Positions 13,329 to 55,906 of a DNA stretch of 64,000 nt are shown here, piece by piece (the first letter of the stretch is position 1; every line of letters starts with the position of its first letter). The DNA is from Lepidodermella squamata. Taxonomy: Eukaryota > Animalia > Gastrotricha. A program made the position numbers and the translations under genes. Location: the NCBI GenBank assembly GCA_047495785.1, contig JBLDXI010000001.1, forward strand, positions 310,001 to 374,000, in the 5' to 3' direction. Under the pieces are notes generated by a model that did not search any database, was not told the origin of the DNA, and worked only from the letters and a program-made list of their open reading frames with translations.

Positions 13329-13487
13329 GGAGAGGGGCTCATCAAGACTGATGGCGGCCGTGTCTTCAAAAATAGTGTTTGTGATGAGAGATGAATAAAA
13401 AATTCCGTCAAAAATAAACCAGAAAAATTTTAAACTGAAACATCCGTCTTTTTCGATTAGAACATATTTTGAATTGTTAAATTGAAA

Positions 13488-36044: not shown

Positions 36045-37121
36045 ATTATTTTTCGATGTAATTTTTTCAACTTGAACGGTTCTCACTTTCGTGAAAATAA
36101 ATGACGATTTTTTTACGGGAAGATGCTTGGGTCTTTCTCAATATCACCGCCGAAGTTCACACCTGGAATACGCATAGCATTGGAATCCAAAAGACGTCGA
36201 GTTATTTGTATGATATTCTTTATTTTCTCGCATATCAATATGTTGACAAAAATTTACATGGAGACGCGCAAATAATGTGTTTGGTTTTTTGTGCACTGTT
36301 GATGCTGTTTGGCTATTATTTACAAAGTTGGGAACAAAAATTTTGCATTCAACAAAAATTTCACGGTTTTGCTCAGTCAGCATATAGAGAGTCATCATCA
36401 TTCATTCATCATAACTTCATAGAATTTTCAAAATTATACAATATAGTTTTGTGCTTGCTTTACAACTTTGTAAATCATCGTCAATTCTGTAAAACAAACC
36501 GTTCTCGATTTTCCATATAAATAAAAATGTAGAAATGCGTTAGGCCGCGACGATGCTCTCTTTTTCAAATATATAGCAAATATTTTTTATGAACAATAAT
36601 ACATCTTTTATTCACAACTTGATCTTTTATTTGCTGAATAGTTGCTTTCGTATCGTACAAAGTCGCGGCGAAGGAGGTGGAGTGAAAAGTTCGAGCGCTG
36701 AAAACTCAGCTGAGAGAAAGAAAAGAAGATGGAACTTTACAAGTTATGCACATTCATCAACAATCATCAACGATTTTATAATAATAGCCAAACACAACTA
36801 ACGTCATGAATAAAACTGGGCTGGAAAGGAATAGAGGGCGCGTTTGCAAAAATGGAAGAAGAGATTTCTTTCGTAATTATATTATCATTTCGAAAAAAAC
36901 AGATCATTCATATCATTTTCTCCACCCCACTCCTATATATCGCCTGTTGATGCGAGAGCGGTTCAAGGTATCAAATGATGACGCATTATCATAAATAGCA
37001 ATAATAATCAATAGAAGTCTTTTAGAATATCCACTAATAATCTTTCTTTGTAAACGCTAAATAAAATGAAACCGTCGTTGTGAAGAAATGAAGAAATAGA
37101 AGAAGCAGTATTTGGCGAGGT

Positions 37122-40100
37122 TTAGCAGCGTCTTGGCACCGACGAGGACTTCTGGGAAGACTCTTCGTCACTGCTCGACGACGATGCTTCTGACGAAGCT
37201 GGCGGGGTGTCAGGGTGCGAAGAGTTTATTGCTTGTGAAGAACATGGCACATTGGGCTTGGCGAGGGAGGAAGGAGAAGTCGAAATTGAAGTCGAAAACG
37301 CAGGCGATGCGTCGGGCGAGCCTGGCAACGGCGCATCAGCAATCACTGGGTCATTTTCTTCTTCAGGTTCTACTTCATCCGCAGAATCGCCCGGTGGCGT
37401 CAACGGCGGCGTCGACGACGGCTGGTGACTGCTGCTCTCGAGCTCGTCTTCGCCATCTTGGCTAGACGAGTCGGAGTACGCATCGCTGTTGCGCCGAGGT
37501 GTTACTTCTTCTCCTTCCCCTTCGTTGTGGACTGTCGCGCTCACTGATGGAATGCTGTTGCTAGACGGGTCCGATTCCAGGGGCACTCGGCGCTGGCCGG
37601 CGGCTCGCTTTGCCGCGGCCGCTCGCCATTGTCGCCACGCCACGAGCACCAATACTGCAAGGCCTGTTGAAGATAGAGAAAATCAAATATAGACATGGTG
37701 AAATGGTGAAAAGTTAAGCGATCAACTTACCTAAGGTAACAATACCCATCCAGGCTATCACTCCGACAGAGACACTGGACAAGGCGGCAGGAGCGCTGGC
37801 TTCAGCGCCATCGGTTTTACCGGCCTTGTCAAGGCCGCGGTCGCCAACTTCGAGTTTGCCGAACCGCGAGTTATTGTTGGCCAAAGTTTGACCGAAGTCC
37901 ATCATTGCTTCTTCAGGGAAGACTGAGTTCTGTAAGATGCAGATGTAGCTGCCGTAGGTGTTGATGCATCGATAGCCGGCGGTGCACGGGAATGATTCGC
38001 ACTCATCGACATCTGTAGGGAGAAGAAAAAAACAAGGTAAAAACGTGAATAACAATATTGTGCAAAGCAAACGTACCGTCGCAGCTATGCATGTTGACGT
38101 TGAGCAAGAAGCCACGTCGGCAGATGCACTCGTAACCATCGGCGCGGCTAGGATTCTCGACGCACTGCTGCTCGCAGAGACCTTGGTAGCGAGCGCAACC
38201 TTGGATCTGTTCGCAAGAGTGCCTGTTCGGCAGCAGTTTGTAGCCGTCGCGGCAAGAGCACAAGTACGAGCCTTCGGTGTCGGTGCACTGGTGCTCGCAG
38301 CCGCCGTTGCGGTCGAGACATTCGTTGACGTTGACGCAGCGAGTGCCGTTCATCGGGCGGTGAATGCCAGGCGCAACTTCGCACGAGCACAAACGGCCAC
38401 GGAAGGTCAAATGGCACGTGACCTTCTCAGCTGGGCAGTCGAGACGACCATCGAGTTGATAACCGTCGCGGCACGTGCAGTAGTAGCCTGGGTAGGCGTT
38501 AAGACAGAGCTGATCGCAATAGCCGTTGTTGGTGCGGCATTCGTTGGTGTCGCTCATGACCTTGGTTAGATCGATGTTAGCAAGACCGCTGCCACCGGGG
38601 CCAGGTGGGCCAGGCGGGCCAGGAGGACCAGCAGGACCTTGTCTACCTGGGCTACCAACCGCGCCAGACTCTCCCTTAGGACCAGCAGGACCAGGGCTTC
38701 CGTTGTTGCCAGGGCGACCGGCAGGGCCTCGAGGGCCGCTGGGACCAGGCGAGCCAGTGTCACCCTTAGGACCAGGATTGCCGGTGGATCCACGGATGCC
38801 ACTTCCACCACGAGGGCCAGGCATGCCCGGTGGTCCAGGAGGACCAGCGATGCCAGGGAGACCTTGAGGACCAGGTCTGCCGTCTTGACCGGGGGATCCC
38901 GGCAAGCCGCGTTGACCTTGGTCACCCTTAACACCAGCGCTGTTGGTACCAGGTTCACCCTTTTCACCACGATCACCGCGATCACCCTTCGAGCCAGGGA
39001 GGCCAGGAATGCCAGCAGGGCCTTGACGGCCTGGAGCACCCATAGCACCGCTCTCACCCTTCTGTCCGCGAACACCAGGTGTGCCAGGTAGACCAGGTTC
39101 TCCTGCGCGACCAGGATCACCAGTAGGACCACGCGGGCCAGGGACAGCTGGAACATTGTTCACGTTTCCAGGTGGGCCAGGGGGACCGGCAGGACCGCGA
39201 AGACCGCGGGCGCCAGACTCACCCTTCTCACCACGAGGGCCAGGAATGCCGACGCCAGGGGCACCTTTAGCTCCACTGGGACCACGTTCACCAGGGCGAC
39301 CTGGTGTACCATTTTGTCCGTCAATACCACGCTCGCCCTTCGGTCCGGCAGGTCCTGGTTGACCATTTTCTCCGGGACGACCATCTCGTCCTTGCTGGCC
39401 AGGTTGGCCGGGTAGACCTTGAGAACCGCGAGGACCGGAAGGACCAGGGTTACCAGGTGATCCAGGTCTGCCAGCTGGGCCTTGAGGTCCACTGCGTCCG
39501 GGTAATCCGGCGATACCAGCAGGCCCAATAGGACCAGGAGGACCGGCTTGACCAGCTTCTCCGCGAGGACCAGGTTGACCAGGTTGGCCAGGTTGTCCGT
39601 CGTTACCAGGGCGACCAGGCGCACCAGGCAAGCCCATTCCAGTAGGACCGCGAGGGCCAGATGGACCAGGGGCACCAGTTCTACCTGACTGTCCAGGTTG
39701 GCCAGCAGGTCCCTGAGGACCGCGAGCTCCGGAGTCACCCTTAGGTCCAGGATTTCCGGCTTGGCCCTTTTGACCAGCAGGGCCAGGTTGACCTGGGAAT
39801 CCTTGCTCACCACGGGGACCAGGGGAACCAGATGGACCACGTGATCCGCTCGCTCCCTTGACACCAGGAAGACCAGCCTCACCCTTCAGACCAGGGATGC
39901 CAGCTTCTCCACGGTCACCCTTCGCGCCGAGAGGGCCAATGGGACCACGTTCGCCAGGCATACCAGGAGTTCCGGCTGGACCAGGCGCACCACGAGCACC
40001 TGATTGACCCTTCGGGCCAGCTTCACCAGGTCTACCTGGGGTACCAGGAACACCTTGATCTCCCTAAAATGGAAAACGGTAATGAACAAATTCAACAAAT

Positions 40101-43100
40101 GCTAAGTGAATCTTTACCTTGACAGAGTCTCCCTTCGGACCGCGTGGACCACTTGGTCCGGGCAATCCAGTACGGCCTGTAGCTCCCTGAAGACCTCTGG
40201 GTCCAGAAGGTCCAGGAACACCAGGAGCACCTGGAGAACCTCGGTCACCAGGGCGACCATCTTGGCCAGGAGCACCAGCAGGTCCACTATTGTAAACAAA
40301 GTTATATATTGAAGCATTCACGAGAAAGTGTTAACGTACCGAATGCCAGATTCACCACGACCTCCACGCTCACCCTTGCTGCCTTGAGGACCCGGTAAAC
40401 CAGGCTGGCCGATGTCACCCTTTTGGCCAGGAACACCAGCAGGGCCACGAGGTCCACTCTCACCATGGGCACCTTTGGGACCAGCTTGTCCGGTTTGGCC
40501 AGTTTGACCAGGTTGACCGCGAGATCCAGAGACACCTTTCTCTCCCTTCGATCCAGGGGCTCCAGGTTGGCCGGCTTGTCCGGTTGGACCTCTGGCTCCG
40601 CTAATGCCTTGTGGGCCGACGGGACCGGGCCTGCCGATTTGACCAGTTTGGCCAGGAGGACCTTGCGGACCGCTGGCACCTGGTCTTCCAGATGGACCAG
40701 GCTGACCAGTCGGACCAACGATAGATCTTCCGTCAGCACCAGGAGCACCGGGGATACCAGCCTCACCCTTTTGGCCTGGGACGCCTGGCATACCACGAGC
40801 ACCAGAGGCGCCAGGTCTGCCAGCTAAACCAGGTGTTCCAGAGGGACCCATTGGGCCGACTGGACCGCGTTCACCGGGTGAGCCAGTATCTCCTCGTCGT
40901 CCAGCCGCTCCGCTCTCTCCCTTAGAACCCTTCGGGCCGACAATACCAGGGACACCCTGAGGACCACGTGCGCCAGACGGTCCTGGCAAGCCAGTAGAAC
41001 CACGAGCGCCGGGTTGACCAGCGGCGCCTGGTTGGCCGTCTAAACCATTGCGACCAGGTTCTCCTTTCATGCCTTGCAGACCAACAGGGCCCTGAGGACC
41101 GCGCGGGCCTGATAAGCCTTGCGCTCCTGGAGCTCCCGTGCGACCAGGTTGACCGGTTTGGCCAGGCACGCCTTGAGGTCCGAGATCACCTTTCTCACCA
41201 CGTTGTCCGGGTTCGCCCTTACGTCCAGGCTCTCCAGTGAAACCGCGGGGGCCAGACAAGCCTGGGACACCACGCATGCCTGGTTCACCCTTGACACCAG
41301 GAGCACCGATGGGTCCAATAGGTCCGAGATCACCCTTTTGGCCTTGCTGACCAGGTAATCCAGGGCGGCCTTGAGGCCCAGAAACACCCATGGGTCCACG
41401 ATCTCCCTTAATACCTGGCTCACCACGTTGACCGGGGAGGCCAGGAATGCCTTGGGCGCCACTTGTTCCGCGATCACCCTTCTGACCAGGTTGTCCGATG
41501 GGGCCTTGAGGACCGAGAGGGCCACGCTCACCACGTTCTCCTTGATCACCCTTGTTGCCTTGGATACCAGGAGTACCAGGGAAACCACGAGGTCCAGAAG
41601 CACCAGGTTGACCAGTTCTACCAGTGATACCTTGTGGGCCTTGGGAGCCAGGTTGACCAGGAACTCCTTGAGGTCCGCGCTCACCAGCTGGGCCAGCAAC
41701 GCCAGGGAAGCCACGAGGACCAGACAAACCGGGGATACCGCGTTCTCCAGTGCGACCTGGCTGACCAGTTTGACCAGGTTGACCTGGATTGCCCTGGTCT
41801 CCCTTGAAACCTTGCGGGCCTTGTTGGCCTGGTTGGCCTGGAACGCCAGTAGGACCACGAGCACCAGATTGACCAGGGATACCACGATCACCCTGATTGC
41901 CCTTAGTTCCTTGAGGTCCTTGAGGTCCAATAGGTCCGAGAGGGCCTTGCGGGCCACGGGCTCCACTGTTGCCTTGCGAGCCTTTAGGACCTTGGATACC
42001 TTGATCGCCCTTAGCTCCGGGACGGCCCTCCGGTCCGATAGGTCCGATGGGGCCACGTTCTCCCTGAGGACCAACGCGACCAGTCTCTCCACGAGCACCG
42101 CTAGCGCCTTTGTCTCCCTTGGAACCAGGGGCACCACGCGCGCCAGAAGTTCCAGGAACACCTTGTTGACCTTTCAGGCCTGTCTGACCAGTGGGGCCAT
42201 CACGACCAGGGACGCCAGCCGGACCTCGAGATCCAGATGTACCCTTGTCGCCCTTTTCGCCAGGTCGGCCTTGTACGCCTTGAATGCCCTGAGTTCCGGG
42301 GGCTCCACGGGGACCAGAGATGCCTATAATAATATTCATGAAATGAGTATCTTCAGAAAATAATCAGCTAATAATCTTACCTGGAGCACCAGTTAGACCA
42401 CGGTCTCCGCGATCACCCTTCGGGCCCATCAAGCCAGGAGCACCAGGCTGACCAGTCAGACCGATCGGGCCTCGAGGACCGGATGGGCCTTGCTGACCAG
42501 TCCTGCCGGTGGGTCCAGCGGGGCCAGGAGTACCAATAGCACCCTTAGCACCAGATCGACCAGGTGCGCCGTCGTTACCGCGATCACCCTTAGCGCCGGG
42601 GACACCGGGCAAGCCGGTTACACCTTGAATGCCGATACCCGGCTGACCACGTTCACCACGAGGTCCGCTAGGGCCGATGGCGCCTCGGTCTCCCTTGATG
42701 CCAGGAACACCCTGTTCACCGTTTCGGCCAGGGACACCTTGATCTCCCTTTGGTCCGATTGGGCCGATTGGTCCGATAGGGCCAGCGATGCCAGGCTGGC
42801 CTCGTTCTCCTTTCGCACCAGATGTACCTTGCGAGCCCTTAGGTCCTTGAACACCAGGGGTACCAGGTCTGCCCGCAGCGCCAGAACGACCATCAGTACC
42901 GCGATCACCCTTCGGGCCTGGAAGACCAGTTTGGCCTCGAGGGCCAGATACACCAGGGACGCCTTGAGTACCTTTCTCGCCAGTTCTTCCTTGAGGACCT
43001 TGAGGACCACTTTGTCCGCGCAAACCAGGAGCACCAATAGGACCCGGCGCACCTGTGATGCCTTGAGGACCGATAGGTCCACGCTCACCATTTCTGCCAG

Positions 43101-46100
43101 GTTCACCAACGCGACCAGTGTCACCAACGTTGCCTTTTTGACCAGGCTGACCAATGGGACCTTGAGGACCGCGAGCTCCGGATACACCCTTCTCACCCGG
43201 AGTGCCGCGATCACCCTTCGCACCGCTGGTACCGCGGGGACCCATAGGACCAATAGGACCGATCGGGCCGAGAGCTCCTTTCTCACCAGGCACACCTGGG
43301 CGGCCTTGGGGACCTTGAGGTCCACTTCTGCCCTGAGGTCCGAGATCACCTTTAGGTCCAGCAACACCAGGGTTACCAGTGGGGCCACGAGGTCCGCTTT
43401 GGCCAGTTGGGCCGCGAACGCCAGGAGTACCAATAGGGCCGATTTCACCCCGGTCTCCCTTAATGCCTTGGATACCAGGAATACCTTGAATGCCTTGTGG
43501 ACCTTGAGGACCGCGAGCGCCCGAATTACCAGGAGAGCCCTTGGGACCGACATTTCCTTGGTCACCTTTAGCACCTTGTTGGCCAGGGATGCCAGGTTGA
43601 CCTTGTGGGCCACGAGCGCCAGACAAGCCAGGGAGACCAGTTTGACCACGTTGACCTGTTTGACCGAATTCACCCTTGTCACCTTTGGTACCAGGAACGC
43701 CCTGGGCTCCAGTGCGGCCGACAGCTCCTTTATCTCCCTTCGGACCGGCAACGCCAGGAATACCTTGAATACCAGGAGTGCCCTGGGGACCACGGGCGCC
43801 AGAAACACCCTGTGATCCGCGTTCACCCTTGTCACCAGGAACACCGCGAGGTCCAGCGGGGCCGGATCTGCCAGGAACACCAATAGGTCCGATGGGACCT
43901 CGCTCACCCTGAGGACCCTGAGGTCCGATTTGTCCGGTGAGACCTTGAGGGCCGGGAAGACCGCGATCGCCAGAATTGCCTTTCACACCACGAGCTCCAG
44001 ATTCGCCCTTTTGACCTCGTTCGCCAGGAATACCAGTGCGACCCTGGTCACCCTTAGCACCCGATGTACCTTGCGGACCTCGAATACCAGGAGCACCTGG
44101 TTGACCAGTGAGACCAATTGGACCGATGGGGCCGATGGGGCCACGTTCGCCAGGAACTCCCGGGACTCCGCGTTCACCCGGAACACCTTGAATACCCGGA
44201 ACACCTCGCGGACCAGATGGGCCTTGCAATCCAGTTCTACCAGGTTCTCCTTTCAAGCCTTGAATGCCGGGGACACCTTGAGGACCACGGGCGCCACTCT
44301 GACCAGGAACACCACGATCTCCTTGGGCTCCTCGATCACCCTTAGAGCCAGGAATACCAGGATTTCCAGTCAAGCCAGGTTGGCCAGGAACACCTTGAGG
44401 ACCTTGAGGTCCGATAGGGCCTCGCGAACCACTAGTTCCGGGAACACCTTGGTTGCCCTTAGCTCCAGGTACACCGATCGGGCCTTGAGGGCCAACCTCA
44501 CCACGGGGACCTTGAGGACCAACAGGCCCAAGAGGACCAATGGGACCCTGTGGGCCTCGCACACCAGAGTTTCCTTGATTTCCTTTGTCTCCCTTAGGAC
44601 CAGCAACACCAGGGGCACCAGTGCGACCGACTGCGCCAGATGTGCCTCGAGGACCGAGGTCTCCTTTGTCACCCTTGGCACCAACTGGACCTTGCTGACC
44701 AGGAACACCGCGGGCTCCGGAAAGACCAGGTGCACCAGTTCGGCCAGTTTGTCCAGGGACACCTTGCGGACCAACTGGTCCCAAGTCACCTTTGTTGCCT
44801 TTCTCTCCAGGTCGGCCTTGAGCTCCACTGGTTCCTTGTGGACCACGAACACCGGGCTCTCCCTTCGAGCCGACAGGTCCCTGAATGCCAGGAACGCCTC
44901 GAGCTCCAGATTGACCAGTTCTACCAGGAACACCGGTAGCTCCCAGATCGCCCTTGCTTCCTTTAGGTCCAGATCGGCCGGGGATGCCAGAATCACCCTG
45001 GTTGCCCTTGATTCCTTGGGGTCCTTGAGGTCCGACGGGGCCAAGAGGTCCGATGTCACCCTTCTGGCCGGTAGGTCCTCGAGCACCGCTAGCTCCGGGG
45101 ATACCAGATCTGCCAGTTGGACCGACAGCGCCAGATCTGCCAGGAACACCTTGGTCACCCTTGGGTCCTTGTCTACCAGTCTCGCCGATGTCACCCTTTT
45201 GACCTTGGTTGCCCTTGTCTCCGGGCAAACCTCGGGCACCAGTAATGCTTCGACCAGGTTGACCGGTTTCACCCTAAGTTCCGGCAAATCAATGTTTTGT
45301 TTCAATAATCATATTAATAATCTTACCTTGACACCTTGGTCACCCTTCTGACCAGTAGGACCAACAAGACCTGGGCGACCAGCTGCTCCAGATGTACCTG
45401 GAACGCCTCTATCACCTTTAGGACCAGCAACACCTTGATCACCCTTGTTGCCTTTAGCCCCGCTGACACCAGGTCGACCAGTCAAACCAGTCGGGCCGAA
45501 TTCGCCCTTTGGACCAACAGGTCCTTGCAAACCAGTTGGGCCCATTGGACCTGAAAGACAAGAATAAGGATTAAAACAAATAGCCGCAAAAAATAATTGT
45601 TAAGCGTACCTCGAGCGCCGGAGTTTCCTTGTTGTCCCTTGGGTCCAGCAATGCCAGGGGCACCAATTGGGCCGATTTCACCTTTCTGACCCTTGATGCC
45701 AGTTCCAGCGGCACCGCGAGCACCAGGTTGACCAGGAGCACCAGTCGGACCCATTGGTCCAATCGGACCACGGGATCCGGAGGTACCAGGCAGGCCAGTT
45801 AAACCAGTGAAACCTCGGTCACCCTTAGGGCCTTGAGCTCCAGACGTGCCTCTGGGACCAAGGTCACCCTTGTTGCCTTTCTCGCCAGGCGCTCCAATAG
45901 GACCAGGTTGACCAGTTCGGCCAGTTTGGCCTTCCGGACCGCGCTCACCAATCGGACCTTGGGGTCCACGAGGGCCAGAGTTGCCTTGCCTGCCAGGAAT
46001 GCCAGACACACCGGGGACACCTTGGTCTCCCTTGGTGCCTTGAATACCGCGCGGGCCACTGACACCTTGAGGGCCTCGCTCGCCAGGAACACCACGGTCG

Positions 46101-49100
46101 CCTTGGTTGCCCTTGATACCTTGCGGTCCAATATCACCACGATCGCCTTTAGGTCCGATGTCACCTTTAGCACCACGAGCACCAGAAACGCCGGGGAATC
46201 CACGGTCTCCTTGGTTTCCTTTAATACCCTGTAGACCAGGAACGCCAGTAACACCTTGGTCGCCCTTGATGCCTTGAATGCCATTGTCGCCTTTTTGGCC
46301 CTTAGCGCCAGACGCACCACGTTGTCCGGTCAGACCAGTGGGACCTCGAGCTCCAGATTGGCCAGTGATACCTGGTCGTCCGGTTTGACCAGGGACGCCA
46401 ACGTCACCCTTGAGACCACGAGCACCTGATGCGCCAACGTTGCCTTTTTGACCTTCAGGGCCACGGAGACCTGTCGGTCCCTGGTCACCCTTAGGACCGA
46501 CGATACCAGGCATACCCCGAGGGCCAGAAACACCCGGAAGTCCAGGCAAACCAGTAGGGCCGCGGGTACCATCAATACCAGGGACACCACGTTCACCAGG
46601 GACACCTGGGACACCTTGGTTTCCTTTGTCGCCCTTGATGCCAGTACCACTTCGACCAGTTGCACCGACAGGACCAACGGGACCACGTTCGCCTTGAGGA
46701 CCGCGCTCTCCTGGAACGCCACGAGCGCCAGAGGTACCAGGAACACCACGATCACCTTTCGTGCCTTGGATGCCAGGGACACCAGTAGGGCCTTGGACAC
46801 CTGGGACACCTCGTGCTCCAGATTGACCGGGCCTGCCGTCGTTTCCGCTGTTACCCTTGTCACCCTTGAAGCCTTGCGGACCCTGCGGACCAATTGGGCC
46901 GATCGGACCACGAGCTCCACTGTTACCTTGTGGGCCCTGGGGTCCACGGTCACCTTGATTGCCCTTAGGTCCAATGGCACCAGACCTACCAGGCATGCCA
47001 GGCATACCGGTTGGACCAACAGGACCGACTTGACCAGTTCGACCAAGGTCTCCCTTTTCGCCAGTGTCTCCCTTGTTACCCTTTTCACCTGGGCGGCCAA
47101 TAGGACCTTGGGCACCTGATGTTCCACGGTCACCCTTCAGACCTTGTGGGCCAATTGGGCCGATTGGACCGATCGGGCCTCGAGGACCAACTTCACCAAT
47201 AGGACCACGAGCACCCGAGGAGCCGACGTTGCCCTTGTCACCCTTAATACCAGGGGCGCCAGTGAGACCAGTTTGACCAAGAGAGCCTTTAGGTCCGCTA
47301 ACGCCACGTTCTCCCTTTTGGCCAGGGAGACCAGTAATACCGCGTGGGCCAGAAGTACCCTGAGGACCACGGATGCCTGGCTCTCCTTTTTCGCCAGTGA
47401 AACCGCGGTCACCCTTCTGTCCGATTACCGTTTGACCAGGAGTACCCGGAATACCGGCAGGACCAGGCAGACCAGCGTCACCCTTAGTACCCTTGGGGCC
47501 GATAGCTCCACTGCGTCCAGGAATACCTGGGACTCCAGCATCACCCTTGATACCTTGGGGGCCTCGTTCACCAGTAATACCGGGTTGGCCATTGATGCCA
47601 GGGCGACCAGTCGGACCAATAGGACCAGAAGTACCTCGAGGTCCAATGTCTCCCTTGTCTCCCTTCGAGCCACGAGCGCCAGAGTTGCCTGGAGCACCTT
47701 TCGGACCAGCGGCACCGTCGCGGCCATCTTTGCCGGGAACACCCTGAGCGCCAGTGGATCCGGGGCGGCCTGGCAGACCAGTTCGACCAGTGTCACCAGT
47801 GTTGCCTTTGTCGCCCTTGTTACCGAGGTCGCCTTTGGGTCCTTGCATGCCGCGGGGGCCGGAGACGCCAGGCGCGCCAGTTCTACCAGGTACACCTTGA
47901 ATACCAGGCTCACCAGTGCGACCAACCTCGCCCTTAACACCTCGGGGGCCAGAAACACCCTGAGGGCCGATATTGCCAGTAGGACCACGCGGGCCGAGTT
48001 CGCCTTGAGGACCACGTTCACCAGGAACGCCTCGAGCTCCGGAGTTACCTGGACGACCTGGGACACCTTGGTCTCCCTTGTCACCCTTCGAGCCGACCAA
48101 GCCTTGAGGACCAGGCTGACCAGTAAAGCCGCGCGGACCCGATGGACCAAGTGGGCCACGCTCGCCAGGAATACCGCGATCCCCTTTCTCTCCCCGAGCT
48201 CCAGAGCGGCCTGGTACACCGTCGCGTCCAGAGGCACCAAGATCACCTTTGTTGCCTTTGTCTCCATTTGCTCCCCGTGGGCCAGCAGCTCCAGATGGGC
48301 CTCGAGGACCAATAGGGCCCTGAATACCAGGGGTACCTTGAGGACCTCTCTCGCCGGGAACACCACGAGCTCCTGAGATACCAGGAACGCCTCGGTCACC
48401 CTTGGGGCCGATTGGGCCGAGTTCTCCAGGACGACCTGTGTTACCAACTTCACCCTTTTGGCCGCGAGCACCAGATTGACCAGTAGGACCTCGTGGTCCA
48501 AGGTCACCTTTGTCTCCCTTGATACCAGGTTGACCAGGTTGACCAGTGGCACCAGTGCGGCCAGACCGACCGGGCTGGCCAGTTTGACCTTCACGGCCTG
48601 TCTGTCCGGTTAAACCAGTGATACCTCGTGGTCCGGAAATACCAGGAACACCTCGTTCACCAACGTTACCCTTTTCACCAGGGCGTCCGACGGCACCAGT
48701 AGGACCAACACGGCCTGGAACTCCTTGATCTCCTTTGTCGCCCTTAGAACCGATCGATCCCTTGGCACCCGATTGGCCAGGCGCTCCACGAGGACCCTGG
48801 AGACCAGTCTCGCCGGGGCGACCGTTGATTCCAGGAACACCAGTTAGACCACGCTCGCCAGGGATACCTTGAGAGCCTTTCGGTCCGCTGACACCAGGTC
48901 GGCCAGTGAGACCAGGAACGCCTCGTTCTCCGATTGGGCCTTGCTCACCAGGACGGCCAGGAATACCGGTTGGGCCTTGGATACCTGGTTGGCCAGGAAC
49001 ACCGCGAGCACCAGAAATGCCAGGAACACCGCGATCACCTTGATTGCCTTTATCGCCCTTGGAGCCGGGTACACCAGGATTACCGATCGGACCAGTGTTA

Positions 49101-52100
49101 CCGCGACCTCCCTTGTCTCCTTTTTCACCGCGAGGTCCACCAATACCGGGTTGACCGGTGGGGCCTCGTGAGCCAGAAATGCCAGGTACACCACGATCAC
49201 CTTGGTTGCCCTTAATGCCGGGGACGCCTTGGTCGCCCTTGAGACCGCGAGGTCCTGAAATACCAGGAACACCTTGAGGACCTTGAGGACCACGCAGGCC
49301 AGTTTCACCAGGGCGGCCGACTTCTCCAGGTCGACCAGGTTGTCCAGTCATACCAGGAACACCAGGTACTCCAGTGAGACCAGTTGGGCCACGGGGTCCA
49401 GAAATGCCTTGACGACCTGGAACACCCTGTTCGCCTTGGTCACCCTTTGAGCCTCGGTCTCCCTTCAAGCCGACAGGACCGGTAAGACCAGGACGGCCAG
49501 GAATACCATTCGGGCCGGGCACGCCTTGGTCTCCCTTGGGACCAATGGGACCACGCTCGCCAATTGGACCTCGCTCGCCAGGCTGTCCAGTCAAGCCCGG
49601 TCTGCCTTGAGGACCAACGGCACCAGATGCTCCGCGATCACCCTTGTCACCTTTCACGGTCAGACCTGGGACACCACGCTCACCGGCATCACCCTTGGGG
49701 CCTCGAGCGCCTGAGTTACCAGTCGGACCACGTGGGCCAACAGGTCCTAGATCACCCTTCAGGCCTTGTGGGCCACGAGAGCCAGAGATACCCTGAATAC
49801 CAGGTTGGCCTTGCGATCCCTTGGGGCCAGCAGCTCCAGATCTGCCGGGTTGGCCAGTTGGGCCTTGAGCTCCATCACGACCAGGCTCTCCACGATCGCC
49901 CTTAATACCGATACCAGGAGCGCCTCGAGCGCCGGATGAACCAGGCTGGCCAGTTTGTCCACGGTCACCCTTCGGACCCACAATACCTTGAGGTCCTTGA
50001 TCACCTTTCGCACCAGGCACACCAGGACGGCCAATCGGACCTGACGGACCGGCACGTCCAGGAACTCCAGTAGGACCAATAGGACCTTGGGGACCGAAAT
50101 CTCCTTTATTGCCTTTCGGGCCAACAGCGCCAGAAGTACCAGGGCGGCCAGGAACACCTTGATCGCCCTTGGGACCGATAGGTCCTTGAGGGCCAACTTC
50201 TCCCGGTCTACCATTCAAACCAGGCACGCCTTGATCACCCTTGCCACCCTTGGCACCAGATGTTCCTTGAGGGCCACGTTGACCAGGCACACCTGAAGCA
50301 CCAGTGCGACCAGTTGGGCCACGAGGACCGACGTCACCAGGCCTGCCCGCAACACCAATGTCACCTTTATCACCCTTGACACCTCGTGCGCCGCTAATAC
50401 CAGGAGCTCCGTTGTTACCCTTGGGGCCGATTGGGCCAACTGGACCCAAGTCACCTTGTCTACCTTTCTCGCCAGGTCGACCTTGAGCACCAGTAGCACC
50501 CTTCTGTCCGAGGTCACCCTTTGCTCCTTTCGCTCCCGAAGTTCCCGGAGCGCCACGCTGTCCAGGAACGCCTTGTTCGCCAGGGCGACCGGGAACACCT
50601 TGGTCTCCTTTGTTTCCTTGATCTCCTTTCAGACCGATTGGGCCGATAGGGCCACGAGCTCCAGAAGCGCCAGGAACACCAGGCCTGCCCTCTCTACCAG
50701 TCTCACCAGTTGGGCCTTGACGACCCGGTTGGCCTGGTGTGCCGAGATCACCCTTAGGCCCAACGGGACCTCGGGCGCCAGAAGGACCTTGGATACCAGG
50801 GCTACCAGTTCTACCGGTCGCGCCTTGCGGGCCAGATCTGCCTGGAATACCGGTGATACCTTGCGGACCAGGAAGGCCAGGAACACCTCTGTCACCAGAT
50901 TGACCGGTGAGGCCAGGTACACCACGATCTCCCTTGGGGCCGGTAGCGCCGCGCTGGCCAGGATTGCCAGGAGTTCCGTCACGGCCAGAAGGGCCAGTCC
51001 TACCAGTTTGTCCTCGAGGTCCGACTTGTCCAGTCAGACCCTGTGGACCGATGGGACCAATTGGGCCAAGTGGTCCGCGCTCGCCAGGAATGCCTTGATC
51101 GCCCCTGTTTCCCTTAGGACCGAGTGCGCCTGAGGTGCCAGGGCGCCCAGGAACACCTTGTTCTCCAGGACGTCCAGGAATACCTTGGTCTCCCTTGTCA
51201 CCCTTTGATCCATCACGGCCAGGAACTCCCTGAATGCCTTGTTCTCCTTTCCTGCCAACAGCGCCGGATGTGCCAGGACGTCCAGTAGCGCCAGGGACAC
51301 CAGGAGTACCAGTAGGTCCACGAGCACCTGAAGTACCTGGAACACCAGGCTGTCCACGGTCACCAGGTCGACCAGCCAAGCCGGTTTCGCCGGGAACTCC
51401 TCGGTCACCTTTGGGACCAACTGGGCCGATTTGACCAGTAGCACCACGAGCACCAGAATTGCCAGGAATGCCAGTGGCACCAGGGCGGCCAGGAATACCC
51501 GAGACACCCTGAGGTCCTTGCGGACCAGTGCCGCCGCGCTGTCCACGATCACCCTTATCACCTTGATTTCCTTTCTCGCCAGGAACACCGCGAAGACCTT
51601 GAGGGCCCTGAGGACCACTTTGACCTCTTTGGCCAGGGACACCAGGTGCTCCGTTAATGCCAGGGACACCACGCTCACCAGTTGGGCCGCGAACGCCAGA
51701 ATTGCCTTGGTTTCCCTTGATGCCAGGAACACCTTGATCACCCTTCTGACCTGTCAGACCTTGAGGCCCGCGGGCGCCAGAGTTGCCAGGGTTTCCAGTG
51801 CGACCAGGAGCGCCAGTGTTGCCTTGATTACCTTTCGGACCAGATGCACCAGGTCGCCCAGTTGGGCCGAGGGGTCCTTGAATGCCAGGGACACCGCGCT
51901 CGCCTTGAGGACCAGGGGCACCGTCTCTACCGGGTACGCCAGCTCTGCCTGTTTCTCCAGTGAAGCCACGAGGACCGGATGCACCAATTCTGCCCGGTTC
52001 GCCAGGTCGACCAGGATTACCCAAGTCTCCCTTCTCACCAGGAATGCCAGGTCGGCCGATTTCACCTTGTGGGCCTCGTGGACCGACAGGGCCGATGGGG

Positions 52101-55100
52101 CCCATAGGACCAGTAATGCCGCGTCCAGGAATACCAGCTTGTCCAGTAAGACCGGTTGGGCCAGGTAAGCCTGGAACACCGCGTTCACCCTGAATGCCTT
52201 GCGGGCCGGGGCGACCCGTCGGTCCGATAGGACCAGATACACCAGGAATGCCACGGGGGCCTTGAATACCGGCATCTCCTTTCGAACCTGGAGCGCCATC
52301 TCGGCCGGGCTGGCCGGGGCGTCCAGCCTCTCCAGTCAGACCGCGAGAACCGCTGTTACCAGTGGGACCTTGGCGGCCAGGAACGCCGGCAACACCTTCA
52401 AGACAGGATAAATAAACTCAAGTCAAAATTTAAGAAATAATATTTTCTTACCTTGATCGCCCTTAGGACCTTGCGGACCAATGGCACCTCGGGGACCAGA
52501 GCGGCCAGGGACACCGGGGGCGCCAGTGTCTCCGACCTCACCCTTTCGACCAGGAATGCCGGATGCTCCGGTGCGGCCAGGCTTGCCTTCAGCACCAGGA
52601 GCTCCAGGACGGCCAGGTACACCAGCTGCTCCGGGGGTGCCGGGAATTCCACTCGCTCCTGTCTGTCCTTTTCGCCCTGGAATGCCAGCGAGGCCAGGCT
52701 CGCCTTGATCTCCCTTAGCACCATTCACGCCAGGAGTACCATCTTGGCCGGGGAATCCACGCTCGCCAGTCGGACCAGGCAAGCCTCGATCACCTTTCGG
52801 GCCGCCAACGCCTTGCGGACCCTGGGGACCGATAGGACCAGAGAATCCACGTTGGCCAGGTTGGCCAGGTTGGCCAGGTTGGCCGGGAACGCCGGCACTG
52901 CCTTTCGGACCAGTGCGACCTTGAATTCCTTGTGGACCCGGATTGCCTGTGAGACCTTGCACACCCGGCTGACCTGGGTTACCAGGACGGCCATCGTTTC
53001 CAGCATCACCTTTCTGTCCTTGAATTCCGGGGCGTCCCGGAATACCAGTTGGGCCAGGAGGACCTTGTGGGCCAACAATCGAATCACCAGGGCGACCTTG
53101 ATTACCCTGAGCACCAGTTTGACCTTGTCTACCAGGAACACCAGGATTGCCGGTTTGGCCTGGTGCGCCAATTGAACCAGGGCTTCCGCGGTCGCCTTTC
53201 GGACCGCCAGGACCAGTCATGCCTCGCGGACCAACAGCGCCTGGTAGGCCTCGGAGACCCGGAGAGCCCGGAGCGCCAGCTTGACCAGACGCACCAGTTC
53301 TTCCGTCACGTCCAGTGTTACCACGGTCACCTTTATCTCCGGGCAATCCGGGAAGGCCAGGGTTACCAGGAGCGCCGACGCGGCCAGGTTGTCCAGCCAT
53401 TCCAATATCTCCCTTTTGACCGGGTTGGCCAGGCATTCCAGCCGGGCCTGCAGGTCCAGTGCGACCAACCGCGCCTAAAACGAATCGTATTTTTACATAT
53501 ACCTATGAAGTTTTTAATCCAGCAACATACCTTGACGACCAGGTTGGCCGATTTCACCAGTTGGACCGGGGCGGCCTTGTTGTCCGGGTTCGCCGCGAGG
53601 GCCAGGGCCGCCTACAGCGCCCGTTTGACCTCGCAAGCCACGCGGGCCCTGAGCTCCTGGACTGCCAGGAGCGCCAGGGGCACCACCGTCACCTTTCTCG
53701 CCTCGAGCTCCAGTTCTACCCGGAAGACCGTTTGTGCCAGGAGTTCCGCGATCACCACGGTCACCCTTGCTGCCCGGAGTACCAGGAACGCCAGTTTGGC
53801 CTTGAAGACCGCGAGATCCTGATATTGAGGAAAACATATATTTAAGACTTTCTTAATAAAAATTATTGGGCCACAAACCTGTCGCGCCTGGAATGCCAGG
53901 AGAGCCAGTAGCGCCAGGGCGACCAGGTGTACCAGGGACACCAGCAACACCAGGCTCGCCAGTGCGGCCAGGAGTGCCAGGGAAGCCAGAGACACCAGGC
54001 AAGCCCCGAGAACCAGTTGATCCAGGAGGGCCGGCTGGGCCTCGTTCTCCACTAGGTCCGCGTTCGCCATTTCTACCAGGAACACCTGCAGCGCCAGGAA
54101 TTCCAGGATTGCCTCGATCGCCAGGAGGTCCGGCAGAGCCAGTTCGTCCGGCTGGACCAGGCGGTCCTGCCCTTCCGGGGGTTCCGGGCGAGCCAGGATT
54201 GCCAGGGACACCTGCTGTACCTGGCCTTCCGGCAGGGCCTGTGCTACCACGATCACCAGGGACACCAGGCCTGCCGGGCACGCCTGCTTGTCCTGTAGAG
54301 CCAGTCGATCCACGAACACCCGGAAAACCCGGGGATCCTGCATCACCCTTTGGTCCGCGGTCACCTAACAAGTAATGGCGTAAAAAATGCTAAAAAATGA
54401 CATGTGGGTAAACAAACCAGGCCGGCCAGGTTCTCCGTCGCGCCCAGGGGGACCGGGACGGCCAGTGGGACCTGGAAGACCAGTTGGACCGGTTGGGCCG
54501 GGTAGGCCACCTCGGCTGCCACCGGATCCAGGAGGGCCGGGTGGGCCAGGAGGGCCAGGAATCGCTGTTAACAAGAAACATAATTGCGAATTAGCCAAAA
54601 ATAATTAAAAATTGAATAAATCCCGTCACAATTTCACAGCGTAAACAAAGCACTTTAATTAGGGTATAAGTTAATCGTCATTATATGGATAAAATTCGGA
54701 CACGCAAAATTAATGGTCTATAAAATCCCAAGTAAAACGACTAATAACAATTATTAGTCGTAAATCCACAAGCAAAAAAATAAAAAATCGAGGTATCAGG
54801 GTAAACTGATTAATTCATCATAAGGCCAAAGCACCCGATACGGAGCAAATCTGTGATACCGAAGTAGTGATCAACATGATGGCGCGGCTTCGCAGACTGG
54901 CTACGCGTTGTAGCTGTTTGAATCTGACGCTTTTCACGTTTTTCCGCTGCTATGACCGAGCTATTAGCTTGGTCTATTTCTTCAAATTGGCAATTCAAAT
55001 TCGAAACAAATTAATAAACGATAAAAATTGCGTAACAAAAGTATTCCTACTACAACGAAACATGGAAATCCTGGGTGAGTAAACGTACCGGTATCAATAG

Positions 55101-55906
55101 CGACACCGACTGAATGCCGATAATTAGGCTTGAATTCTGCGAATTGAAGTGTCTTGCCAACTTCCGGTAGCGAGTCAGTTTCAAAGAAGGTATGAATGTA
55201 TTCCGGGTAGTCACGCGCTACTTCGTGACTGATCGGGTCAATGCCTTCTTCGTAAGTCCAACCAAAGTAAGAGACTGCGTAAATAAGAGGCCGGTCTGGT
55301 ACATCAAACTATAATTGGCGAAGAAATCAAGTAGAAAAGTCGTCACTTTTTTAACCTGGAAAAAACTTACAATGTACTGACCGCCTTGCCTAGGTAAGAC
55401 AACCGGGTACTCGTAAACGAGTTGCAATGTGGAGGAAGACGACACATTTGCTACCGGCCGCCATATTTGAAAACGCACTCTCGTTGGTCGAGGGCTGTCT
55501 GGATGGACGTAACACAGGAATTTGGCAAGAATACCCGTCACAAGCGGGAACTCGCGATTCAACCAAGTACGCCGTTGTGTGTCGGGATTTGTGTAACGTC
55601 GCTGTTTAATTTCAGCTCGTGCAGGGTAAAAAATTAAAGAGCCGACTGTCTCATCTAAATTAACGAAAAAAGTAATCAATTAGCTGGAATAATTCGAATT
55701 TTCTCCAGCTTACTAAAAAATCTCGGGGAAGTGGTCGAGGAATCTTCTTGAGCTGTTGTTCCTGCGACGAGGAACAGTATCGATGCGATTCCAGCGAAAA
55801 GTATTATTCCGAAATTAGGCCGCAGCGAAAAGGCCGATACAAATGACGCTCCAGGTAATGACGGCGCCTTTGTAGGCAGCAGGTGTCGCTGACGGCGGCT
55901 GCTCAT
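37122..55906 (-). CDS. Giant type I transmembrane collagen (~5,800 aa): signal peptide, novel N-terminal domain, ~5,100 aa Gly-X-Y, ~5 EGF/cbEGF modules, TM helix, acidic Ser-rich tail
   Basis: About 15 coding exons joined by GT-AG introns that continue the Gly-X-Y reading: ~55906-55712, 55655-55370, 55309-55089, 54564-54419, 54364-53879, 53821-53531, 53475-52452, 52395-45610, 45551-45327, 45274-42380, 42324-40339, 40288-40117, 40063-38076, 38012-37731, 37663-37122. EGF motifs include [28 protein letters not shown] and [10 protein letters not shown]. The TM helix [28 protein letters not shown] is split by intron 37664-37730. Confidence 0.9.

What the first reader, a model, noticed from the sequence alone, without database searches (positions are those of the whole stretch)
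37122..55906. Micrometre-scale, membrane-anchored giant collagen with type I topology
Seen in sequence: one spliced minus-strand gene whose collagenous exons sum to about 15.5 kb (about 5,100 residues, about 1,700 Gly-X-Y triplets). It begins with a signal peptide and ends with about 5 EGF modules, a TM helix and a tail of about 165 aa. Established: fibrillar collagen helices are about 1,000 residues (about 300 nm), and the vertebrate transmembrane collagens XIII/XVII/XXIII/XXV are type II (N-terminus inside). Inference: at about 0.29 nm per residue this is a rod of about 1.5 micrometres anchored by its C-terminus. That length matches the biochemically described giant annelid cuticle collagens (about 1.5-2.4 micrometres, with a terminal globule). 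It could be the gene class behind such collagens, or a new cell-surface tether or cuticle filament.
Basis: partly seen in the sequence, partly recalled or inferred. Interest (0 to 1): 0.95.

Follow-up and report, generated by a model that had tools for sequence, protein, structure and literature searches.

The report
Giant membrane-anchored collagen with EGF stalk
This small invertebrate has one expressed gene for a collagen chain five times longer than ours, rooted in the cell membrane by its tail end and tipped by a lectin-like knob; I found no paper describing this layout, though short relatives sit unnamed in worm, clam and lamp-shell genomes.

Summary
A 16-exon minus-strand gene (ATG 55906, stop 37122) encodes 5,875 aa. 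In order it has a signal-peptide-like start, a 167-aa non-Pfam beta-sandwich domain, 5,154 collagenous residues (1,706 Gly-X-Y triplets, 16 short breaks), an EGF array, one TM helix and a 170-aa acidic tail.

- **RNA evidence:** one spliced transcript contig with 0 mismatches joins collagen exons 12-14 to the EGF, TM and tail exons, exactly at four predicted introns.
- **Orthologue:** a distant metagenomic orthologue, with synonymous sites saturated, aligns without gaps over 2,134 residues. It keeps the same break positions and sequences.
- **Assembly:** the DNA has no long internal repeats, so assembly inflation is excluded.
- **Family:** the same layout occurs in miniature in unnamed proteins of Owenia (annelid) and Pinctada (mollusc). 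It also occurs in Lingula and in a transcript contig of at least 4,170 aa from an unknown organism.

Type I topology and the ~1.5 micrometre rod are inferences. The link to annelid cuticle collagens is plausible but unproven, and the host is only an unidentified spiralian. Giant collagen genes as such were reported in annelids in 2025. What is new is the family and its reversed, membrane-rooted layout. The scan noted other giant collagens elsewhere in this genome; none of those notes mentions EGF or TM.

The parts
37122..55906 (-). Whole coding span: 16 exons, CDS 17,628 nt, 5,875 aa
   Evidence: Gene model built from GT..AG introns; it gives a single ORF with one terminal stop. Exons, high to low: 55906-55714, 55654-55371, 55308-55089, 54979-54860, 54564-54418, 54364-53879, 53818-53531, 53474-52452, 52395-45610, 45550-45327, 45273-42381, 42323-40340, 40286-40118, 40063-38077, 38012-37731, 37663-37122.
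55751..55906 (-). Start codon and signal-peptide-like segment (aa 1-52; hydrophobic core aa 32-49; likely cleavage TTA|QE)
   Evidence: Read from the sequence. The orthologue L009 has the same layout, ending SNA|[11 protein letters not shown]. No SignalP run was possible.
55089..55654 (-). Exons 2-3: conserved 167-aa N-terminal beta-sandwich (lectin-like) domain, aa 66-232
   Evidence: No Pfam hit. There are 14 phmmer hits. It is 87% identical to the L009 orthologue, with pN 0.093 against pS 0.746. The AF2 model of the orthologue has pLDDT 73 and is all-beta. VIA Z is 9.7 to the Cwp84 lectin-like domain and about 7 to CBM32, F-lectin and discoidin. An annelid-dominated Atlas cluster matches at TM 0.73.
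54860..54979 (-). Exon 4: variable linker holding the protein's only R-x-[KR]-R site (REKR, aa 247-250, 54927-54938). The acceptor is ambiguous by 6 nt
   Evidence: The linker is poorly conserved in L009, apart from PRH...PGPPGPPG.
38594..54556 (-). Collagenous region, aa 276-5429: 1,706 Gly-X-Y triplets in exons 5-14. (GPP)3 sits at both ends. There are 16 short interruptions, 13 of them hydrophobic two-residue (G4G) breaks. Net charge is +291
   Evidence: There is no internal DNA repeat longer than 80 bp. It aligns gap-free with L009 over 2,134 aa, across exon junctions 483/484, 579/580 and 920/921. The breaks are conserved in place and sequence.
37933..38548 (-). EGF array: EGF, 4-Cys 'PMNGTRC' module, EGF, EGF, truncated cbEGF (aa 5445-5628, crossing intron 14)
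   Evidence: Pfam: FXa_inhibition 5.8e-25, cEGF, EGF_CA. The region is collinear with L012 at 41% identity. The junction and module motifs are shared with Lingula, Owenia and Pinctada.
37635..37773 (-). Transmembrane helix, aa 5682-5705, split by intron 15 (37730-37664). Motif I-A-W-M-G-I-V-T
   Evidence: The splice is confirmed by the X2 contig. The W-x-x-I-x-T/S motif is shared with four homologues.
37125..37634 (-). Cytoplasmic tail, 170 aa: a basic stop-transfer stretch, then an acidic Ser/Pro-rich sequence; stop codon at 37122-37124
   Evidence: Of 37 listed coding differences to a related species' transcript in exons 15-16, 30 lie at codon position 3.
37000..37121 (-). Start of the 3' UTR. 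The transcript contig runs 715 nt further, beyond the stretch that was laid
   Evidence: X2 record 4: window 37000 corresponds to record position 3233 of 3948. AATAAA/ATTAAA signals lie at 36631, 36612 and 36224.

Best explanation
**What is shown.** This is one real, transcribed gene for a homotrimer-type collagen made as a type I membrane protein.

**What is inferred.** After signal-peptide removal the chain is held in the membrane by its single C-terminal helix. Three chains probably register and nucleate next to the membrane, at the C-terminal (GPP)3 cluster beside the EGF array. The TM helices, which carry a conserved W-x-x-I-x-T/S motif, may help this step. The helix would then zip towards the N-terminus, as in fibrillar collagens.

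The product would be a strongly cationic rod of about 1.47 micrometres with about 16 conserved two-residue kinks. It would carry a trimeric lectin-like beta-sandwich head at its far tip.

**Likely role.** Because every molecule is rooted at the same plane, the kinks and heads would sit at fixed heights above the cell. I therefore think it most likely works as a membrane-rooted structural filament of the apical or pericellular matrix. In that role it would set the thickness of, and organise, a polyanion-rich coat or cuticle-like layer. It might be released from its anchor later.
For: **Shown**
- Single ORF across 16 exons.
- A spliced RNA contig with 0 mismatches joins exons 12-16 at exactly the predicted introns 12-15.
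- A related species' transcript also joins the collagen end, EGF, TM and tail.
- The orthologue L009 has the signal exon, then the N-domain, then collagen. It aligns gap-free over 2,134 aa across three window introns.
- Break positions and sequences (IV, IT, IK, VK) are conserved, although non-Gly identity is only 40% and synonymous sites are saturated.
- Both orthologues are strongly basic, at +56 and +49 net charge per 1,000 aa.
- The same N-domain, collagen, EGF, TM and tail order is found in Owenia P0054 and Pinctada P0031. Collagen, EGF, TM is found in Lingula P0059 and in the L012 ORF of at least 4,170 aa.
- Proline is enriched at both rod ends.
- The N-domain has a lectin-like jelly-roll fold.

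**Inferred**
- Trimer formation, folding direction, rod length and matrix role.
Against: - No signal-peptide or topology predictor and no protein data were available.
- Exons 1-5 and introns 9-11 have no RNA support here, because only the 3' 6 kb could be laid.
- The organism, the tissue and the side of the cell are unknown.
- If the host is a rotifer, as another agent's note suggests, it has no classical collagenous cuticle.
- The REKR site could remove the head.
- The rod shows no D-period-like charge periodicity, so there is no sign of staggered fibril packing.
- Net charge is not conserved family-wide: the L012 rod is about neutral.
Confidence: 0.55

Rival explanations
1. It is a precursor of a free matrix or cuticle fibre. 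On this reading the membrane anchor serves only to register and fold the three chains and to deliver them to the apical surface. The ectodomain is then cut in the ~53-aa juxtamembrane linker and built into an extracellular fibre layer as a free ~1.5 micrometre rod with a terminal globule. That is the molecule type described biochemically for annelid cuticle collagens.
For: - Annelid cuticle collagens are described as very long triple helices with globular domains (PMC11766948).
- The family and its N-domain occur in annelids.
- L012, a second giant member, has Thr at 24% of Y positions and little Pro. This recalls the glycosylated-threonine chemistry reported for Riftia cuticle collagen (PMC11766948).
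- The juxtamembrane linker is long and varies between close species.
- About two thirds of nematode cuticle collagens are likewise predicted to be made as membrane proteins and then cleaved (PMC11304992).
Against: - There is no R-x-[KR]-R site or other recognisable cleavage site between the helix and the TM.
- The 170-aa cytoplasmic tail is under purifying selection, which is more than a throw-away anchor would need.
- The host is not known to be an annelid or to have a collagen cuticle.
- No cuticle peptide data were compared.
Confidence: 0.3
2. It is a giant pattern-recognition or scavenger-type receptor or tether. The cationic collagen stalk and the distal lectin-like head would bind polyanions, glycans or microbes far from the cell, and the conserved tail would couple this to endocytosis or signalling. 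This would be the working principle of class A scavenger receptors and collectin-12, but with reversed polarity.
For: - The net charge is strongly positive and is conserved between orthologues.
- The head has a lectin-like fold.
- The cytoplasmic tail is conserved.
- The N-domain also occurs on mucin-stalk TM proteins (P0008, P0023), so it behaves as a portable surface head.
Against: - A rod length and kink pattern conserved to the residue suggests a structural lattice more than a receptor.
- The tail has no recognisable sorting or signalling motif.
- No sugar-binding residues could be assigned.
- The head may be removed at REKR.
Confidence: 0.1
3. The gene model is partly a chimera: the N-terminal exons (55906-54860), or the exons around introns 9-11, belong to separate transcripts, so the real protein is shorter.
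For: RNA contigs were laid only on 37000-42990. Upstream of 40470 the X2 contigs are short, shallow and partly chimeric. The donor of intron 4 (GTATCA) is weak, and the acceptor of intron 3 is ambiguous.
Against: - The L009 orthologue has the same order: signal exon, N-domain, linker, collagen.
- N-domain and collagen lie in one ORF in P0005 and in the Owenia protein P0054.
- The alignment is gap-free across introns 6-8.
- Introns 9-11 are canonical, 53-59 nt long, and keep the Gly-X-Y phase.
- There is no stop codon or start context inside the rod.
Confidence: 0.05

Closest known systems
Unnamed spiralian proteins with collagen, EGF, TM order: Owenia fusiformis 'unnamed protein product' (P0054, 579 aa), Pinctada imbricata FSP39_003202 (P0031, 862 aa), Lingula anatina LOC106170605 (P0059, 2,861 aa)
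   Same: All have a signal peptide. Owenia and Pinctada have the same N-terminal beta-sandwich domain. In all, the collagen is followed directly by a D-T-[DN]-E-C...N-N-G-x-C EGF module. All have a single C-terminal TM helix with the W-x-x-I-x-T/S motif and a cytoplasmic tail.
   Different: Their helices are 25-309 triplets, against 1,706 here. Lingula has IgGFc_binding domains in place of the N-domain. None is characterised, and I found no paper on them.
Vertebrate and nematode transmembrane collagens (MACITs XIII/XXIII/XXV, COL-99; collagen XVII)
   Same: They are membrane-anchored collagens with interrupted helices, trimerise next to the membrane, and can be shed (PMC4678570; PMC11304992).
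   Different: They are type II, with the N-terminus inside the cell, and have furin sites next to the TM. They have no EGF and much shorter helices. Here the anchor is C-terminal and no furin site lies near it.
Annelid cuticle collagens (biochemical class; Gaill et al. 1995 and Mann et al. 1996, as cited in PMC11766948)
   Same: They have a very long triple helix with globular end domains and form non-banded fibres. The length class of 1.5-2.5 micrometres (from memory) matches the 1.47 micrometres inferred here.
   Different: The papers I read gave no gene-level architecture for them. Neither the host here nor any cuticle location is established. The composition here (Pro 22% at X, 25% at Y) is ordinary.
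Giant predicted annelid collagens (Alvinella pompejana 8,859 aa; Paralvinella 7,719-8,689 aa; Eisenia andrei) in PMC12403961
   Same: They are collagen genes several times longer than any vertebrate collagen, and some are supported by transcriptomes.
   Different: That paper reports length and proline content only. It gives no termini, EGF, TM or topology. Whether they belong to this family is untested.
Class A scavenger receptors / collectin-12 (works-like comparison only)
   Same: They have a trimeric collagenous stalk on a membrane anchor with a distal binding head, and a cationic collagen that binds polyanions (own knowledge).
   Different: They are type II, have a coiled-coil neck and SRCR or C-type lectin heads, and their stalks are tens of nanometres long. 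No sequence relationship was found.
CCBE1 (collagen and calcium-binding EGF domain protein)
   Same: It combines cbEGF and collagen repeats. Insect CCBE1-like proteins appear as weak hits.
   Different: It is secreted, its EGF modules precede short collagen repeats, and it has no TM.

Membership tests
Spiralian collagen-EGF-TM proteins (uncharacterised; Owenia P0054, Pinctada P0031, Lingula P0059) | Collagen helix followed within about 10-25 residues by an EGF module beginning D-T-[DN]-E-C-x-x-N-N-G-x-C | tested here: met
   MAFFT alignment of six junctions. Pfam EGF hits.
Spiralian collagen-EGF-TM proteins (uncharacterised; Owenia P0054, Pinctada P0031, Lingula P0059) | Single C-terminal TM helix with W-x-x-I-x-T/S near its outer end, then basic residues and a cytoplasmic tail | tested here: met
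   Window IAWMGIVT, L012 TAWAAIMT, Lingula GLWLTIIS, Owenia LIWAGILT, Pinctada VIWLTIIS.
Spiralian collagen-EGF-TM proteins (uncharacterised; Owenia P0054, Pinctada P0031, Lingula P0059) | N-terminal signal peptide plus the R.W.D...PL..G.L..F..YVH...R.QIWRP...GWT.E beta-sandwich domain before the helix | tested here: met
   Alignment A1. Owenia and Pinctada carry the motif. Lingula does not; it has IgGFc_binding instead.
MACIT / collagen XVII type transmembrane collagens | Type II orientation: short cytosolic N-terminus, signal-anchor TM, collagenous C-terminal ectodomain | tested here: not met
   The TM helix is at aa 5682-5705, after the helix, and is followed by [16 protein letters not shown]. 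The N-terminus looks like a signal peptide with a TTA|QE site conserved in L009.
MACIT / collagen XVII type transmembrane collagens | Furin-type shedding site between the TM and the first collagenous domain | tested here: not met
   The only R-x-[KR]-R site in 5,875 aa is REKR 247-250, at the membrane-distal end.
Fibrillar collagens | C-terminal COLFI (fibrillar collagen C-propeptide) domain | tested here: not met
   Pfam scan of all non-collagenous pieces found EGF families only.
Fibrillar collagens | Uninterrupted helix of about 1,000 residues with D-periodic charge pattern | tested here: not met
   The helix is 5,154 aa with 16 breaks. No spectral peak exceeds triplet-shuffled controls.
Annelid cuticle collagens (biochemical class) | Triple helix of micrometre length with a terminal globular domain | tested here: inconclusive
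   The sequence predicts 1.47 micrometres plus globular ends. No molecule was measured.
Annelid cuticle collagens (biochemical class) | Extracted from the cuticle of an annelid | not testable with these tools
   The host is hidden or unidentified. Other agents' notes say spiralian, possibly rotifer. No proteome data were available.
Nematode cuticle collagens | Small (under 350 aa) chains with Cys clusters flanking short Gly-X-Y blocks | tested here: not met
   There are no Cys in the 5,154-aa helix. Size is 5,875 aa.

The most novel reading that the evidence does not exclude
This family may be the long-sought gene class of the micrometre-long cuticle or surface-coat collagens of annelids and other spiralians. 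On this reading they are made as type I membrane proteins and folded from a membrane-proximal nucleus. Anchoring in the epidermal (microvillar) membrane holds them in register, which fixes layer thickness and kink heights. They are then either kept as a living brush or shed into the fibre lattice. This would be a mode of collagen assembly opposite in polarity to every characterised membrane collagen.
Probability: 0.3. Interest if true: 0.85.

Novelty: new variant of a known kind. Interest (0 to 1): 0.72.

Why it matters
In what I read and recall, all characterised membrane collagens are type II and short, and textbook helices stop near 1,000-1,400 residues. This gene is expressed and conserved, and it combines a helix of about 5,150 residues with a C-terminal anchor. 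That raises the question of how a 1.5 micrometre triple helix is registered, folded and trafficked.

The rod length and kink positions are conserved to the residue across a divergence with saturated synonymous sites. This argues that exact length is functional, as for a molecular ruler or spacer.

The finding also defines an unnamed spiralian family, with members in annelids, molluscs and brachiopods. It gives concrete candidates, and termini to test, for the annelid cuticle collagens. In the papers I could read, these are described only biochemically.

Tried and rejected
- **Assembly inflation:** rejected. Self-BLAST of 37-56 kb finds no repeat longer than 80 bp or above 90% identity, apart from 26-42 bp words. 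The orthologue is also collinear.
- **D-period or other periodicity:** none above shuffled controls for charge, hydrophobic residues or proline.
- **Pfam on the N-terminal exons, tail and linker:** nothing.
- **Foldseek against PDB for the N-domain:** no hit at E <= 1e-3. Only VIA-align gave a usable fold class.
- **Identifying the host:** failed. Run names are coded. An Atlas search with the nicalin neighbour gave only 'Chordata-dominated' clusters. Other agents' notes say spiralian or rotifer, and I did not test this.
- **Identifying the organism of SRR17902662 by paper search:** 0 papers.
- **Paper searches for a type I or C-terminally anchored collagen with EGF:** nothing relevant.
- **Search for giant EGF-bearing collagens of 2,294-7,298 aa:** only Lingula and its metaclust twin appeared among the 120 listed. 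The annelid giants of 7,700 aa and above were outside the length window, so that blank says nothing about them.
- **Metagenomic orthologue contigs:** L005 breaks at the start of the helix and L009 breaks within it, so the orthologue's C-terminus was not recovered.
- **Run X1:** it holds all sampled words but gave only tiny laid pieces, apparently because its long contigs were filtered.
Full report
**1. The observation**

On the minus strand between 38585 and 54556 there are 24 runs of five or more Gly-X-Y triplets, about 1,715 triplets in all. The plus strand has only four chance runs of five. GC rises from about 0.44 to 0.58-0.62 across the region.

Every change of reading frame coincides with a short AT-rich GT..AG intron. 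Most of these split a glycine codon. Joining the pieces gives 16 exons, a CDS of 17,628 nt and a protein of 5,875 aa with a single terminal stop. Thirteen introns are 53-67 nt; intron 3 is 109 nt and intron 4 is 295 nt.

The collagenous region is aa 276-5429, which is 5,154 aa. It holds 1,706 triplets and 16 interruptions. Thirteen interruptions are two-residue breaks beginning with Ile, Val or Leu (G4G type). One is a single residue and one is seven residues. The region contains no Cys, Trp or Tyr. Pro makes up 22% of X and 25% of Y positions, and the net charge is +291. Proline is richest at the two ends, and (GPP)3 caps both ends.

**2. The ends**

The N-terminus has 31 mostly basic residues, then an 18-residue hydrophobic core, then TTA|QE. 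A 167-aa domain follows (exons 2-3), then a 43-aa linker containing REKR. REKR is the only R-x-[KR]-R site in the whole protein.

At the C-terminus, 15 residues follow the helix. Then come an EGF module, a 4-Cys module (C-x9-C-x-C-x...P-M-N-G-T-R-C), two more EGF modules and a truncated cbEGF. Pfam gives FXa_inhibition at 5.8e-25, plus cEGF and EGF_CA. After these come a 53-aa linker and the helix [24 protein letters not shown], followed at once by [16 protein letters not shown] and a 170-aa acidic Ser/Pro-rich tail. Basic residues on the C-terminal side of the helix, together with an N-terminal signal-like segment, give a type I orientation. This is an inference, because no predictor was available.

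**3. Is it one real gene?**

- **Not assembly inflation.** Self-BLAST of the 19 kb finds nothing longer than 80 bp.
- **RNA evidence.** A public run whose contigs behave as a transcriptome (X2) contains one 3,948-nt contig with 0 mismatches. It lies on 40470-40340, 40286-40117, 40062-38077, 38012-37730 and 37662-37000, and continues 715 nt beyond. It therefore skips exactly introns 12, 13, 14 and 15, with CT..AC ends on the plus strand. So the last 131 nt of exon 12, exon 13, exon 14, the EGF array, both TM half-exons, the tail and the 3' UTR are on one spliced RNA.
- **Related species.** A transcript from X3 (90-99% alike) also joins the helix end, EGF, TM and tail, and splices intron 14. Of its 37 listed coding differences in exons 15-16, 30 are at codon position 3. 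The juxtamembrane region and tail are therefore under purifying selection.
- **Comparative evidence for the 5' half.** A metagenomic contig (L009) carries an orthologue. It has a signal exon ending SNA|[11 protein letters not shown], an intron at the same place, the N-domain as one exon (the window's intron 2 is absent), a linker exon, and then collagen to the contig end.
- **Orthologue alignment.** The window's spliced protein, aa 370-2503, aligns with the intronless L009 ORF without a single gap. The alignment crosses the window's exon junctions 483/484, 579/580 and 920/921, which verifies introns 6-8.
- **Not directly verified here.** These are introns 1-5 (supported only by the parallel structure in L009), introns 9-11 (canonical and phase-preserving), and the exact acceptor of intron 3.

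**4. Selection**

Between the window and L009 the N-domain is 87% identical, with pN 0.093 and pS 0.746, so synonymous sites are saturated. The helix is 60% identical overall and 40% identical at non-Gly positions.

The spacing of interruptions is nevertheless the same: 100, 245, 27, 247/246 and 87 triplets. The break residues are nearly identical: IV/IV, IT/IT, IK/IK, VK/VK and VI/IV. Net charge is also kept, at +56 and +49 per 1,000 aa. Exact rod length, kink positions and cationic character therefore appear to be selected.

**5. The N-domain**

It has no Pfam family. A full-library phmmer search found 14 relatives and a profile search found more. Relatives include:
- a Ridgeia piscesae hypothetical protein (domain plus Ser/Thr-rich tail);
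- proteins with the domain on a mucin-like stalk and a TM helix (P0008, P0023);
- proteins with the domain joined directly to collagen (P0005; a short paralogue-type gene in L001).

An AF2 model of the orthologue's domain (pLDDT 73, pTM 0.76) is an all-beta sandwich. Foldseek gave nothing significant. VIA-align gave Z 10.2 to two phage decoration or tail proteins, Z 9.7 to the lectin-like domain of Cwp84, and Z about 7 to CBM32, F-type lectins, discoidin and PHR domains. Language-model neighbours include PF18560 Lectin_like. The nearest eukaryotic Atlas cluster is annelid-dominated, at TM 0.73. I read it as a galactose-binding-domain-like jelly roll. No binding function has been shown.

**6. 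The family**

A search with the EGF region found proteins with the same order of parts:
- **Owenia fusiformis P0054 (579 aa):** signal peptide, N-domain, 59 triplets, three EGF, TM, tail.
- **Pinctada imbricata P0031 (862 aa):** N-domain-like, 25 triplets, many EGF, TM, tail.
- **P0044 (JGI):** collagen, EGF, VWA, EGF, TM.
- **P0039:** part of a 12,651-nt Logan contig (L012).

L012 carries one intronless ORF of at least 4,170 aa, truncated at the 5' end. It has 1,259 triplets, then EGF and two 4-Cys modules, then a TM, RARRRR and a 21-aa tail. Its C-terminus is collinear with the window's at 41% identity. Its helix is chemically different: Ala 44% at X, Thr 24% and Pro 12% at Y, and about neutral charge.

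Using L012 as a long query brought up Lingula anatina LOC106170605 (2,861 aa). It has IgGFc_binding domains, 309 triplets, EGF and 4-Cys modules, a TM and a tail.

Shared hallmarks are the D-T-[DN]-E-C...N-N-G-x-C junction after the helix, the C...C-x-C...[PL]-[LMF]-N-x-[ST]-x-C module, and a W-x-x-I-x-T/S motif in the TM helix. The window's gene is thus the giant member of a conserved but unnamed spiralian family of type I membrane collagens.

**7. Literature**

- Membrane collagens are described as type II (MACITs: PMC4678570). About two thirds of nematode cuticle collagens are predicted type II with furin release (PMC11304992).
- Annelid cuticle collagens are described as very long helices with globular domains, with glycosylated threonine in Riftia (PMC11766948).
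- The Alvinella genome paper reports collagens of 7,719-8,859 aa in alvinellids and one in Eisenia andrei. It gives only length and proline content (PMC12403961).
- I found no paper describing a C-terminally anchored collagen with an EGF stalk.

So 'giant collagen gene' is not new. The architecture, the topology and the family are new as far as I could search.

**8. Mechanism**

Shown: one spliced gene, a conserved architecture, conserved length, kinks and charge, and a constrained head and tail.

Inferred:
- signal-peptide cleavage;
- homotrimerisation nucleated beside the membrane, at the C-terminal (GPP)3 next to the EGF array and TM helices;
- C-to-N zipping of the helix;
- a rod of 5,154 x 0.286 nm = 1.47 micrometres, with flexible G4G kinks about every 90 nm on average;
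- a trimeric lectin-like tip.

Because all molecules are rooted in one plane, kinks and heads would align at fixed heights. This fits the residue-exact conservation of length. I favour a membrane-rooted structural filament of an apical or pericellular, polyanion-rich coat (0.55). The main rival is a fibre precursor that is shed, the annelid-cuticle reading (0.3). Then come a scavenger- or collectin-like receptor (0.1) and a partly chimeric gene model (0.05).

**9. Limits**

- The host is hidden. Other agents call it a spiralian, possibly a rotifer, and I did not verify this.
- Only the 3' 6 kb could be laid with reads.
- No topology predictor, multimer model or protein data were available.
- The annelid giants could not be fetched.

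Noticed in passing
L012:2-12511 (+) (Logan SRR17902662 contig, 12,651 nt): A second giant type I membrane collagen from an unknown, GC-rich source. It is one intronless ORF of at least 4,170 aa with 1,259 triplets (Ala 44% at X; Thr 24% and Pro 12% at Y), followed by EGF and 4-Cys modules, a TM and a 21-aa tail. The Thr-rich Y positions recall the chemistry reported for Riftia cuticle collagen.
   Followed up: partly
window 37635-37773; P0054, P0031, P0059, L012: The transmembrane helices of five family members share a W-x-x-I-x-T/S motif near the outer leaflet. This may be a helix-helix (trimer) contact.
   Followed up: partly
window 38330-38428; L012; P0059; P0044: A small 4-Cys module, C-x(5-12)-C-x-C-x(6-16)-[PL]-[LMF]-N-x-[ST]-x-C, carries a conserved N-glycosylation sequon. 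It recurs between EGF modules in this family and has no Pfam model of its own.
   Followed up: partly
L001:10001-11063 (+) (ENA ERZ27333047 contig): In the metagenomic relative, a short paralogue-type gene has a signal peptide, the same N-domain (53% identity) and only about 160 aa of collagen. The domain therefore heads both short and giant collagens in this lineage.
   Followed up: partly
P0059 (Lingula anatina LOC106170605): A 2,861-aa type I membrane protein combines three IgGFc_binding domains, a 929-aa collagen helix, furin-type RRKR/RKKR sites and EGF/4-Cys modules. This architecture appears to be undescribed.
   Followed up: no
window 54927-54938 (-): REKR is the only R-x-[KR]-R site in 5,875 residues. 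It lies between the head domain and the helix. The orthologue has RHWR/HRRP there instead, so it is unclear whether the head is cleaved off.
   Followed up: partly
window 158-1267(+), 7242-8849(-), 13482-14825(+), 19066-19782(-), 23613-24455(+), 25384-25902(+): The neighbours are ordinary animal housekeeping genes in long, intron-poor ORFs: a WD40 protein, a nicalin-like M28 protein, Rpn13/ADRM1, the mitochondrial calcium uniporter, a FYVE protein and a diacylglycerol-kinase-like domain. The genome is compact.
   Followed up: partly
window 4028-5359 (-): An ORF with a reverse-transcriptase domain (RVT_1, 1e-30), probably a retroelement.
   Followed up: no
window 40470-42990: X2 transcript contigs over the middle of the helix are short, of low depth, and show 'opposite strands' joints. 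These are probably assembler artefacts in collagen-coding sequence, so this run gives no clean RNA support for intron 11.
   Followed up: no
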